From assembly GCA_965644265.1 (NCBI GenBank), contig OZ286468.1:54126001-54190000 (forward strand): a stretch of DNA of 64,000 bases. The letters run 5' to 3'. The translations under genes were made by a program, and so were the position numbers. This document shows, one piece after another, positions 11,169 to 12,957 of the stretch. The first letter of the stretch is position 1. Each line of letters starts with the position of its first letter. The notes below the pieces were generated by a model. That model did no database searches. It saw only the letters and a list, made by a program, of their open reading frames with translations, and was not told the DNA's origin. The stretch comes from Glycera tridactyla. Taxonomy: Eukaryota.

Positions 11169-12106
11169 GTAAGTACTACTGATTCTATGTAAGATATAAC
11201 ATGCACTAACGTTGAGACAGATCTCAAGTATGCAAACCTTTGCATCATGGCTTGACACTAAAGGAAATGACAGAGTTATGGACCTGATTTTACATCTCTT
11301 GCACCCCCTCGGTCTTCACTCATTAATTCATATTTTCCAAGGTATTCATTCTTGAAATACTGGATGTATCAACAAGATTATAACTCAACATAGTACCATC
11401 ACAGTGATGCATCTAGGATGGGTAGTTGGTTGATCGATATTCATTTTTCAACTTTGGCCTTTTTTTCAAAAATGATGTTGGGCCAAATCCCTCCCCATTT
11501 TATCTGAGTATTTTACTACCATTTCCATTGGCACCCTAAAATTTGGCCCTTAATATGGAATTTCTAGATGCATCTCTGCTATCATGAAAAAAAATCGAAA
11601 CGGACAGTGAATTGGACTGACCACAAATATAATTGAATTTGAGCAATACATTCCAGAGCATATTGTTCATCTTTCAATTTATTTTGATTTTTACTTTTTT
11701 ATCCATGTGGGAGATTTGGGAAGAGTGTATGTCAGTTTGTTTCTAACATCTTTTGGCAGATGGTATCAAGCTTCATGAATTGATAGAATGAATTACTCAG
11801 TATTGTATGATGATCATGATAATGATATCGATAATTGAACTATATCAATGTAGTCACACTCATGTTAGCCACTTAACCTGTGATAGCGCTCCCTCATACT
11901 CATTCTGCCAGACATGTGGTTAGTCACGAACATCAGTTGAAGTTTTATTTATAAGAAATATTTGTTGCGATACACTCCTCAACTGAGAGTCTACATCTTT
12001 AGAAATACAGATCATTTCATCTAACCATTCACCAACAATAGGATACCAGTGAAAGGATTCTTCTTGATGGGATAATATAGATCTTGTTAAACCTGTTGAC
12101 TCTCAG

Positions 12107-12184
12107 GTATGGTGTATCTCTCGTTGGAATCATGAAAGAGAGGACTGAATCTTCCTCCAAAGTCAGCGATTCCTATCAAAGACG
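12107..12184 (+). CDS. KCNT: Candidate alternative exon: partial paralog of exon 7 (YGVSLVGIMKERTESSSKVSDSYQR)
   Basis: gactctcag|g tat ggt gta tct ctc gtt gga atc encodes the same YGVSLVGI as exon 7 with only third-position differences; best donor cg|gttaga gives 78 nt, phase 2-2; 3' boundary uncertain. Confidence 0.55.
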
Positions 12185-12957
12185 GTTAGACTTGTATATC
12201 AGCAATACTTTCTATTCACACTATTTAATAATCTTGTTTTACTTCCATAATTGCATTTACAATTAGATGTGCATTGACATTTTTTTCAAAACTTATGGTA
12301 TGCTTCCATATAGATTTGGCAAAATTTGATATACTAAATTTTATGCTGCAAGTTACATCATTTCAGTAGTGTTGCACTGATATTAATTGCCTATATATTA
12401 TGACCAAAAAATATATGTGAAATTATATTCGTATATTACCTATCTGTTGGACAGTTTTAGTTTGGCGAGCACTTCTGCAAGTGGCATCAAATGCTAAAAT
12501 GTTGCTCTTTCCTGCACATTGGCATATTTCAGACTTTATAGTCGCAGAAGCTGTAATGTAAACATGCCACTTTTCAGATCAAAGTAAGGCATTGCACTGA
12601 TATTTTATCATTTTTTATCTTGCATCACAGAGGCATTTAGCTTTGGCATTTTTGGATTTTGCTGGTGCATTTTTGTTTAAATATAAAAATCAATGTGGAA
12701 ATGAGAGAGGGAAGAGGCATGGATATATTTCAGTCCTTTCAGGTGAATCTGAGTATACAATGCATAAAGATGTGCATGCAAGACAACTACTTCAGAACAT
12801 ACTCAAATGAAGTGATGATCATTCTAAGCAGCCTTCCAAGCGCATTGGAAATATACTCGTTCCTAAAGAACAGTCCAGAAGACATACAGAGGTGAAAGGA
12901 GAACATGGGCAAATCATGCTCACTTAATAATATGAAATGATACTTCACTCGTAATAA

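What the first reader, a model, noticed from the sequence alone, without database searches (positions are those of the whole stretch)
12095..12266. Partial exon paralog under apparent protein-level selection, at an AG|GT recursive-type site
Seen: 12107 onward reads g tat ggt gta tct ctc gtt gga atc versus exon 7 a tat ggt gtg tca cta gtt gga att. All 5 differences are third-position and synonymous, keeping (K)YGVSLVGI; the sequence then diverges to MKERTESSSKVSDSYQR. The donor cg|GTTAGA gives a 78-nt phase 2-2 exon, after which the DNA turns T-rich. This acceptor is CAG|GTATGG, so splicing exon 6 onto it rebuilds a donor (AA|GTATGG); exon 7 does not begin with GT. Knowledge: purely synonymous divergence suggests translation, and AG|GT with a competing downstream donor is the RS-exon arrangement of recursive splicing. 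Inference, possible outcomes: a cassette that duplicates a beta-strand and adds a Ser-rich loop; splicing to the phase-2 exon 10a/10b, deleting the RCK1 C-lobe and linker; or a terminal exon stopping at 12264-12266.
Basis: partly seen in the sequence, partly recalled or inferred. Interest (0 to 1): 0.75.

Follow-up and report, generated by a model that had tools for sequence, protein, structure and literature searches.

The report
Short intronic copy of exon start
Inside an intron of an invertebrate Slo2 (KCNT-type) potassium channel gene lies a real 37-base copy of the next exon's splice acceptor and first eight codons. Nothing I could test shows that it is spliced, translated or used for stepwise intron removal, so it is most likely an ordinary duplication relic.

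Summary
Window 12107-12131 matches the start of exon 7 (15679-15703) at 20 of 25 bases. All five differences are at third codon positions and are synonymous, so both encode (K)YGVSLVGI. The 78-nt in-frame stretch to a GTTAGA and the TAG at 12264-12266 are there.

That pattern is nominally unlikely for a neutral copy (p 0.002 to 0.013, judged after the fact). Nothing else supports a used exon:
- Similarity stops dead at 12131.
- The 17-codon tail has intron-like codon usage.
- The proposed donor is weaker than 13 of 14 real donors of this gene and ranks 58th of 221 GTs in the intron.
- Seven distinct relatives have a short intron 6 (160-1365 nt against 4510 nt here) with no second copy.
- None of 126 long Slo2 proteins carries such an insert.
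- No sequencing run could be listed, so splicing was not tested.

The recursive-site reading is weak. YAG|GTR occurs five times in this intron alone. Real exon 7 of two relatives also starts AG|GTATGG. The regenerated donor is poor, and the intron is short.

Best reading: an unused pseudo-acceptor relic (about 0.55). A lineage-specific translated cassette stays open (about 0.22).

The scan had already noted the exon 10a/10b pair in this same gene.

The parts
11019..11168 (+). Exon 6 of the Slo2/KCNT-type channel gene. It ends ...CAT CGA AA| and its donor is GTAAGT at 11169.
   Evidence: Pfam BK_channel_a match, E = 7.9e-8. tblastn of full-length Slo2 proteins. 78-90% identical exon in relatives.
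12094..12106 (+). Pyrimidine-rich stretch plus CAG in front of the copy (tgttgactctcag). 10 of 13 bases match the bases before exon 7.
   Evidence: Acceptor score 4.0 bits, inside the range of the 13 real acceptors, but only rank 27 of 243 AG sites in intron 6. Pyrimidine content 0.65.
12107..12131 (+). Copy of the first 25 bases of exon 7, encoding (K)YGVSLVGI. There are 20/25 identical bases and all 5 differences are synonymous third-position changes.
12132..12184 (+). Open-frame tail MKERTESSSKVSDSYQR(+CG) with no similarity to exon 7. GC is 43%, against 26% downstream.
   Evidence: Tail alignments are no better than null: DNA p = 0.34 and 0.83, protein p = 0.39. Codon log-likelihood ratio is -0.4, typical of stop-free intron windows and in the lowest 2% of exon windows. 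The GC contrast is matched or exceeded at 2.4% of intron positions.
12185..12190 (+). Proposed donor ACG|GTTAGA, with T at +3.
   Evidence: 2.3 bits, below 13 of 14 real donors of the gene, all of which have a purine at +3. Rank 58 of 221 GT sites in intron 6.
12264..12266 (+). TAG that closes the frame if the donor is not used.
   Evidence: No AATAAA or ATTAAA between 12185 and 13500.
15666..15678 (+). Acceptor region of genuine exon 7 (tgttttctcgcag).
15679..15923 (+). Genuine exon 7 (245 nt), YGVSLVGIQQDKPGSTIQLNPGPRH...; donor GTGAGT at 15924.
   Evidence: Conserved in all relatives fetched.

Best explanation
The stretch 12094-12131 is a short, lineage-specific DNA duplicate of the exon 7 acceptor and its first eight codons. 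It sits in an intron that has grown to 4.5 kb in this lineage.

It is most likely a relic: a pseudo-acceptor followed by unrelated intron sequence. It is probably spliced rarely or never, and it contributes no selected protein segment.

Shown: the duplicate is real and stops at 12131, the flanking signals are ordinary for this intron, and it is absent from all sampled relatives.

Inferred: how it arose (a small local duplication or templated insertion, later moved 3.5 kb from exon 7 by repeat insertions), and that the all-synonymous pattern is a small-sample outcome. That pattern is helped by exon 7 itself being able to change only at synonymous sites.
For: - Similarity ends abruptly after 25 exon bases. 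The tails are no more alike than null: DNA local p = 0.34, colinear p = 0.83, protein p = 0.39.
- Tail codon usage is intron-like: log-likelihood ratio -0.4, with 38% of stop-free intron windows scoring as high, and in the lowest 2% of exon windows.
- The donor ACG|GTTAGA scores 2.3 bits, below 13 of 14 real donors, and ranks 58 of 221 GT sites in the intron. The acceptor ranks 27 of 243 AG sites.
- Intron 6 is 160-1365 nt in seven distinct relatives and none holds a second YGVSLVGI-type motif within the DNA fetched, up to 10 kb each side on the longer contigs.
- Intron 6 here holds a 24-nt x13 tandem array and several dispersed repeats.
- No small ORF product like the copy's exists in the 5.8-billion-protein collection. 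No match was found in two metagenome DNA scans.
- None of 126 Slo2 proteins of at least 400 aa has an insert between FHAH(K/R)K and YGV.
- There is no poly(A) hexamer within 1.3 kb downstream.
Against: - All 5 differences fall on third positions and are synonymous: p = 0.0024 naive, and p = 0.004-0.013 against a model with a neutral copy.
- Third-position identity of 4/9 looks as saturated as between distant species. That would fit an old copy kept by selection.
- The 78-nt stretch is in frame and free of stops, and it is more GC-rich than what follows. A contrast that large is reached at only 2.4% of intron positions.
- The acceptor score lies within the range of real acceptors.
- The relatives are all too distant to exclude a lineage-specific functional exon, because synonymous sites are saturated.
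- No RNA data could be examined.
Confidence: 0.55

Rival explanations
1. It is a lineage-specific, translated cassette exon (12107-12184, 78 nt, in frame) spliced between exons 6 and 7. It would insert 26 residues (YGVSLVGIMKERTESSSKVSDSYQR+R) that repeat the strand YGVSLVGI and add a Ser-rich loop in RCK1. Purifying selection on the repeated strand would explain the synonymous-only differences. A variant of this reading ends the protein at TAG 12264-12266.
For: - The codon-position pattern has p = 0.002-0.013.
- The stretch is in frame and stop-free, and it keeps the phase of exon 7.
- The acceptor lies within the range of real acceptors.
- There is a GC step at the proposed donor.
- The same gene already uses duplicated exons at 10a/10b.
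Against: - The donor is weak, with T at +3, while all 14 real donors have a purine there.
- Tail codon usage is intron-like.
- The copy is absent from seven relatives.
- No such insert appears in 126 long Slo2 proteins.
- The word search with the ORF was blank.
- No poly(A) signal supports the terminal-exon variant, and the ORF beyond 12184 is the F/Y/I/N/L-rich product expected of AT-rich DNA.
Confidence: 0.22
2. It is a recursive-splicing site (RS-exon). Exon 6 is first joined to 12107, which rebuilds a donor AAA|GTATGG. That donor competes with the donor at 12185, so intron 6 is removed in two steps or the exon is included.
For: The CAG|GTATGG juxtaposition at 12104-12112 is real. In place, as CAG|GTATGGT, it scores 6.8 bits as a donor, 6th best of 221 GT sites in the intron.
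Against: - After joining to exon 6 the rebuilt donor AAA|GTATGGT scores 2.2 bits, below 13 of 14 real donors. Efficient recursion of cryptic RS-exons needs a strong rebuilt donor (PMC6224609).
- YAG|GTR occurs 5 times in this intron and 56 times on the window's + strand.
- The GT comes from a synonymous AAA/AAG difference plus a Tyr codon. Genuine exon 7 of relatives L003 and L005 starts AG|GTATGG.
- GT is the commonest exon-start dinucleotide (PMC6224609).
- The intron is only 4.5 kb, while the fly recursive sites in the papers listed (PMC8605326, PMC6110457) are described for long introns.
- The site is not conserved.
Confidence: 0.04
3. The copy acts at the RNA level as a decoy 3' splice site. 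It would carry the same exonic enhancer context as exon 7 and so tune exon 7 recognition, or yield non-productive transcripts, for example through the frame-shifting 55-nt form that ends at 12161.
For: The acceptor-like context and the first 25 exon bases are kept together. The acceptor score is in the real range.
Against: An RNA-level role gives no reason for differences to fall only on third codon positions. The copy is not conserved in relatives. No RNA data are available.
Confidence: 0.08
4. It is a chance resemblance. An intronic AG happens to be followed by eight codons that spell the same peptide.
For: The copy is hardly closer to its own exon 7 (20/25) than orthologous exon 7 starts of distant species are (16-19/25), which is what identical peptides alone impose. 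The scan covers very many windows, so rare coincidences will turn up.
Against: There were 0 matches in 100 shuffles. Apart from tandem arrays and two other repeat pairs, it is the only such peptide pair in the window. It sits exactly at an exon start, behind an AG, on the same strand, in the adjacent intron. My rough estimate is about 1e-5 per window.
Confidence: 0.05

Closest known systems
Intronic pseudoexon or decoy splice site left by a partial exon duplication
   Same: An acceptor-like site followed by a stop-free stretch and a weak GT, deep in an intron. It derives from the neighbouring exon, is not conserved, and has no evidence of use.
   Different: The copied part is very short (37 nt), and its differences from the parent are all synonymous. 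A neutral relic shows that only about 1 time in 100.
Tandem exon duplication giving alternative exons, as at 10a/10b in this same gene
   Same: Same gene, same strand, a copy lying upstream of its parent exon, with an acceptor of its own.
   Different: Homology covers 25 of 245 exon bases. Lengths are 78 and 245 nt (0 and 2 modulo 3), so the two cannot replace each other in frame. The copy is not conserved in relatives.
Recursive splicing: ratchet points and RS-exons (PMC6224609, PMC8605326, PMC6110457)
   Same: AG|GT juxtaposition with a further GT downstream.
   Different: The rebuilt donor is weak, the intron is short, there is no conservation, and the motif is frequent by chance here. Use was not tested.

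Membership tests
Slo2 / KCNT-type K+ channel gene (the host gene) | RCK-region sequence matching the BK/Slo family, and orthologs that sources name KCNT | tested here: met
   Exon 6 matches PF03493 BK_channel_a at E = 7.9e-8, above the cut-off. Full-length relatives named potassium channel subfamily T member 1/2 align to 17 exons of the window at about 70-78% identity.
Recursive splice site / RS-exon | An acceptor AG immediately followed by GT | tested here: met
   CAG|GTATGG at 12104-12112. The motif YAG|GTR occurs 5 times in intron 6 and 56 times on the window's + strand.
Recursive splice site / RS-exon | The rebuilt 5' splice site at the exon 6 junction scores within the range of about 90% of canonical donors (criterion of PMC6224609) | tested here: not met
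   AAA|GTATGGT scores 2.2 bits on a matrix built from the gene's 14 donors. 13 of the 14 score higher in leave-one-out. The matrix is crude because n = 14.
Recursive splice site / RS-exon | Splicing intermediates: junction reads, lariats or a saw-tooth in nascent RNA | not testable with these tools
   No sequencing run was listed for 10900-16100, so read laying could not be used.
Recursive splice site / RS-exon | Conservation of the site in related species | tested here: not met
   Seven distinct relatives have an intron 6 of 160-1365 nt with no copy. All are distant, with saturated synonymous sites.
Mutually exclusive duplicated exon pair | Two exons of like length and the same phase, homologous over their whole length | tested here: not met
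   78 nt against 245 nt. Homology covers only the first 25 bases, and the tails are no better than null.
Translated cassette exon | In frame, stop-free, and preserving the downstream phase | tested here: met
   12107-12184 is 78 nt (1 + 25 codons + 2) with no stop.
Translated cassette exon | Both splice sites comparable with the gene's real sites | tested here: inconclusive
   The acceptor scores 4.0 bits, within the real range. The donor scores 2.3 bits, below 13 of 14 real donors, and has T at +3.
Translated cassette exon | Coding-like sequence statistics and conservation | tested here: not met
   The tail's codon log-likelihood ratio is -0.4, intron-like. The copy is absent from relatives and from 126 long Slo2 proteins. 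Only the eight copied codons show a coding-like substitution pattern.

The most novel reading that the evidence does not exclude
An old but lineage-specific cassette exon was born from a 37-nt duplication of the exon 7 start. It inserts a second copy of the RCK1 strand YGVSLVGI plus a Ser-rich, possibly phosphorylatable loop into a Slo2 channel. Selection keeps the repeated strand intact because either copy can take the strand's place in the fold.
Probability: 0.2. Interest if true: 0.45.

Novelty: new member of a known kind. Interest (0 to 1): 0.22.

Why it matters
If the copy is only a relic, it is a small, ordinary by-product of intron growth. Its main use is as a caution that eight codons with synonymous-only differences are thin evidence for selection.

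If it proves to be spliced and translated, it would be a clear case of a new in-frame exon made from a tiny duplication of an exon start. It would alter the first regulatory (RCK1) domain of a sodium-activated-type potassium channel, in a gene that already diversifies itself with duplicated exons. That would interest people working on exon birth and on channel isoform diversity. It would not change the field.

Tried and rejected
- **RNA evidence.** The look-up of sequencing runs on 10900-16100 listed no run, so read laying could not be used.
- **Conservation.**
  - I fetched 11 loci from relatives through exon 7 ORF hits. None has a second copy. Introns are not alignable to the window, so no close relative was available.
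  - The word search with the copy's 60-aa ORF was blank. A blank says nothing about longer proteins.
  - Two JGI metagenome DNA scans, one with a degenerate head-tail junction and one with an exact 23-mer, were both blank.
- **Annotated isoforms.**
  - I used the big profile search to get long Slo2 proteins, then a region search with P0045. No insert was seen at this junction.
  - Isoforms are collapsed at 90% identity and the window's own species is not in the set, so this is weak negative evidence.
- **A larger decayed duplicate of exon 7.** I noticed RRLDLYISNT against KRSDLCFYMNIT, but the local and colinear alignments of the tails are no better than null. Rejected.
- **Insertion with a long target-site duplication.** There is no poly(A) or poly(T) at either inner edge. 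Unsupported.
- **Other features.** No Rfam family, no tRNA-like gene in the repeat just before exon 7, and no minus-strand ORF over the copy.
- **Polarising the five differences with outgroups.** Impossible, because third positions are saturated.

Full report
**What is there.**
- The window carries a Slo2/KCNT-type potassium channel gene on the + strand.
  - Exon 6 (11019-11168) matches Pfam BK_channel_a.
  - Full-length proteins that their sources name potassium channel subfamily T member 1/2 align to about 17 exons between 141 and 37929.
- The protein is about equally similar (about 70-78%) to cephalopod, bivalve, gastropod, nemertean and annelid Slo2, and about 60% similar to deuterostome Slo2. 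The animal is therefore a lophotrochozoan-grade invertebrate that I could not name.
- Exon 6 ends ...CGA AA with donor GTAAGT at 11169.
- Exon 7 is 15679-15923.
- Intron 6 is 4510 nt.

**The observation.**
- 12107-12131 is identical to 15679-15703 at 20 of 25 bases.
- The five differences are the first base (Lys AAG against AAA) and the third positions of the Val, Ser, Leu and Ile codons. All are synonymous.
- The 13 bases before each copy, a pyrimidine-rich stretch plus CAG, agree at 10 positions. blastn reports 37 nt at 81%, E = 6e-4.
- The frame stays open from 12107 to TAG at 12264-12266.
- A GTTAGA at 12185 would close a 78-nt exon that keeps the phase of exon 7.

**Is it more than chance?**
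- The degenerate pattern matches only these two places, with none in 100 shuffles.
- In a six-frame scan of the window, this is the only pair of identical 8-residue peptides with at least 4 base differences, apart from one tandem array and two other repeat pairs that I did not characterise.
- It is anchored at an exon start, behind an AG, on the same strand and in the adjacent intron. I take it as true homology and give chance about 5%.
- Placing five differences among 25 sites puts all of them on the nine third positions with p = 0.0024.
- A fairer model freezes exon 7 at first and second positions and lets the copy drift. Under that model the likelihood-ratio test gives p = 0.013 with the 13 upstream bases and p = 0.004 without them.
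- These values are post hoc and rest on 25 bases.

**What argues against a used, selected exon.**
1. Similarity stops at 12131.
   - The tails are no more alike than null at the DNA level (local p = 0.34, colinear p = 0.83) or the protein level (p = 0.39).
   - So either only about 37 nt were ever copied, or everything else decayed.
2. The 17 tail codons (MKERTESSSKVSDSYQR) have a codon log-likelihood ratio of -0.4.
   - 38% of stop-free intron windows score as high.
   - Only 2% of in-frame exon windows score as low.
3. Scored with matrices built from this gene's own sites:
   - The acceptor at 12107 gets 4.0 bits, inside the real range, but ranks only 27 of 243 AGs in the intron.
   - The donor ACG|GTTAGA gets 2.3 bits, below 13 of 14 real donors, all of which have a purine at +3. 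It ranks 58 of 221 GTs.
4. Seven distinct relatives have an intron 6 of only 160-1365 nt and no second YGVSLVGI-type motif in the DNA fetched, up to 10 kb each side on the longer contigs.
   - The relatives are loci L001, L002, L003/L004, L005, L006, L007/L008 and L009/L010.
   - Their exon 6 and exon 7 proteins are 72-92% identical to the window's.
5. None of 126 Slo2 proteins of at least 400 aa has an insert between FHAH(K/R)K and YGV.
6. The copy's ORF finds nothing in the word search or in two metagenome DNA scans.
7. No AATAAA or ATTAAA lies within 1.3 kb after the copy.

**What keeps the exon reading alive.**
- The relatives are distant. Third positions are only 36-45% identical to the window's, so they cannot exclude an exon born within this lineage.
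- The copy's third positions (4 of 9 identical) look as diverged as those between species. Together with untouched first and second positions, that is what an old, selected copy would show.
- The 78-nt stretch has 43.6% GC against 25.6% in the next 82 nt. A contrast that large is reached at only 2.4% of intron positions.
tblastn confirms that both copies match the same residues.

**The recursive-splicing reading.**
- The AG|GT comes from one synonymous difference (AAG against AAA) followed by the Tyr codon TAT.
- YAG|GTR occurs 5 times in intron 6 and 56 times on the window's + strand.
- Genuine, constitutive exon 7 of relatives L003 and L005 starts AG|GTATGG.
- After joining to exon 6 the rebuilt donor AAA|GTATGGT scores 2.2 bits.
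  - PMC6224609 classes an exon as a putative RS-exon only if the rebuilt donor scores within the range that holds about 90% of canonical donors. It also notes that efficient recursion of cryptic RS-exons needs a strong rebuilt donor.
  - The same paper notes that GT is the commonest dinucleotide at exon starts.
- The intron is 4.5 kb, far shorter than the long introns in which fly ratchet points are described (abstracts of PMC8605326 and PMC6110457).
- I rate this reading at about 4%. Its use was not tested.

**Most likely mechanism.**
- A small local duplication or templated insertion copied the exon 7 acceptor and eight codons.
- Later insertions separated the copy from exon 7 by 3.5 kb. These include a 24-nt x13 tandem array at 12956-13267, a 97-nt repeat at 15253-15349 and 15551-15647, and a 129-nt repeat shared with 61221-61349.
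- The copy now sits as a pseudo-acceptor followed by unrelated sequence and a poor donor.
- The duplicate and its limits are shown. The origin and the lack of use are inferred.

- No N runs were involved.

**Verdict.**

| Question | Verdict |
|---|---|
| Observation | Confirmed |
| Partial exon paralog | Yes |
| Protein-level selection | Suggestive, not corroborated |
| Recursive site | Unsupported |

Interest is low to modest until RNA data or a congener's genome is available.

Noticed in passing
window 11169-15678 (intron 6): Intron 6 is 4510 nt here but only 160-1365 nt in seven relatives. It holds a 24-nt x13 tandem array (12956-13267), a (CAT)n run (13336-13367), and a 97-nt repeat at 15253-15349 and 15551-15647 (95% identical) that ends 31 nt before exon 7 and has relatives at 60080-60257. 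It also holds a 129-nt repeat (14497-14624) shared with 61221-61349.
   Followed up: partly
P0045 (KCNT1 model, Acanthosepion pharaonis) against window 10348-15925: This annotated cuttlefish protein lacks the equivalent of the 50-residue exon 6. Residues 454-492 map to 10348-10464 and residues 493-573 map to exon 7. This is either an in-frame exon skip or an annotation gap.
   Followed up: no
L003:10039 and L005:10039 (relatives' exon 7 start): In these relatives the genuine exon 7 begins AG|GTATGG, so the recursive-type juxtaposition occurs at a constitutive exon simply through the Lys AAG + Tyr TAT codons.
   Followed up: yes
P0194 (Acipenser sinensis, flagged UNVERIFIED_CONTAM by its source): This is the only one of 126 long Slo2 proteins with the YGVCLIGVKRED... 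segment twice. The whole exon is repeated, probably through an assembly or model artefact.
   Followed up: no
L003:839-5359 and L003:12546-14720: Ty3/gypsy-type reverse transcriptase and integrase ORFs flank exon 7 of the Slo2 gene in this relative.
   Followed up: no
window 28921-29029 and 30659-30764: Both copies of exon 10 (10a and 10b) match the same residues of full-length Slo2 proteins.
   Followed up: partly
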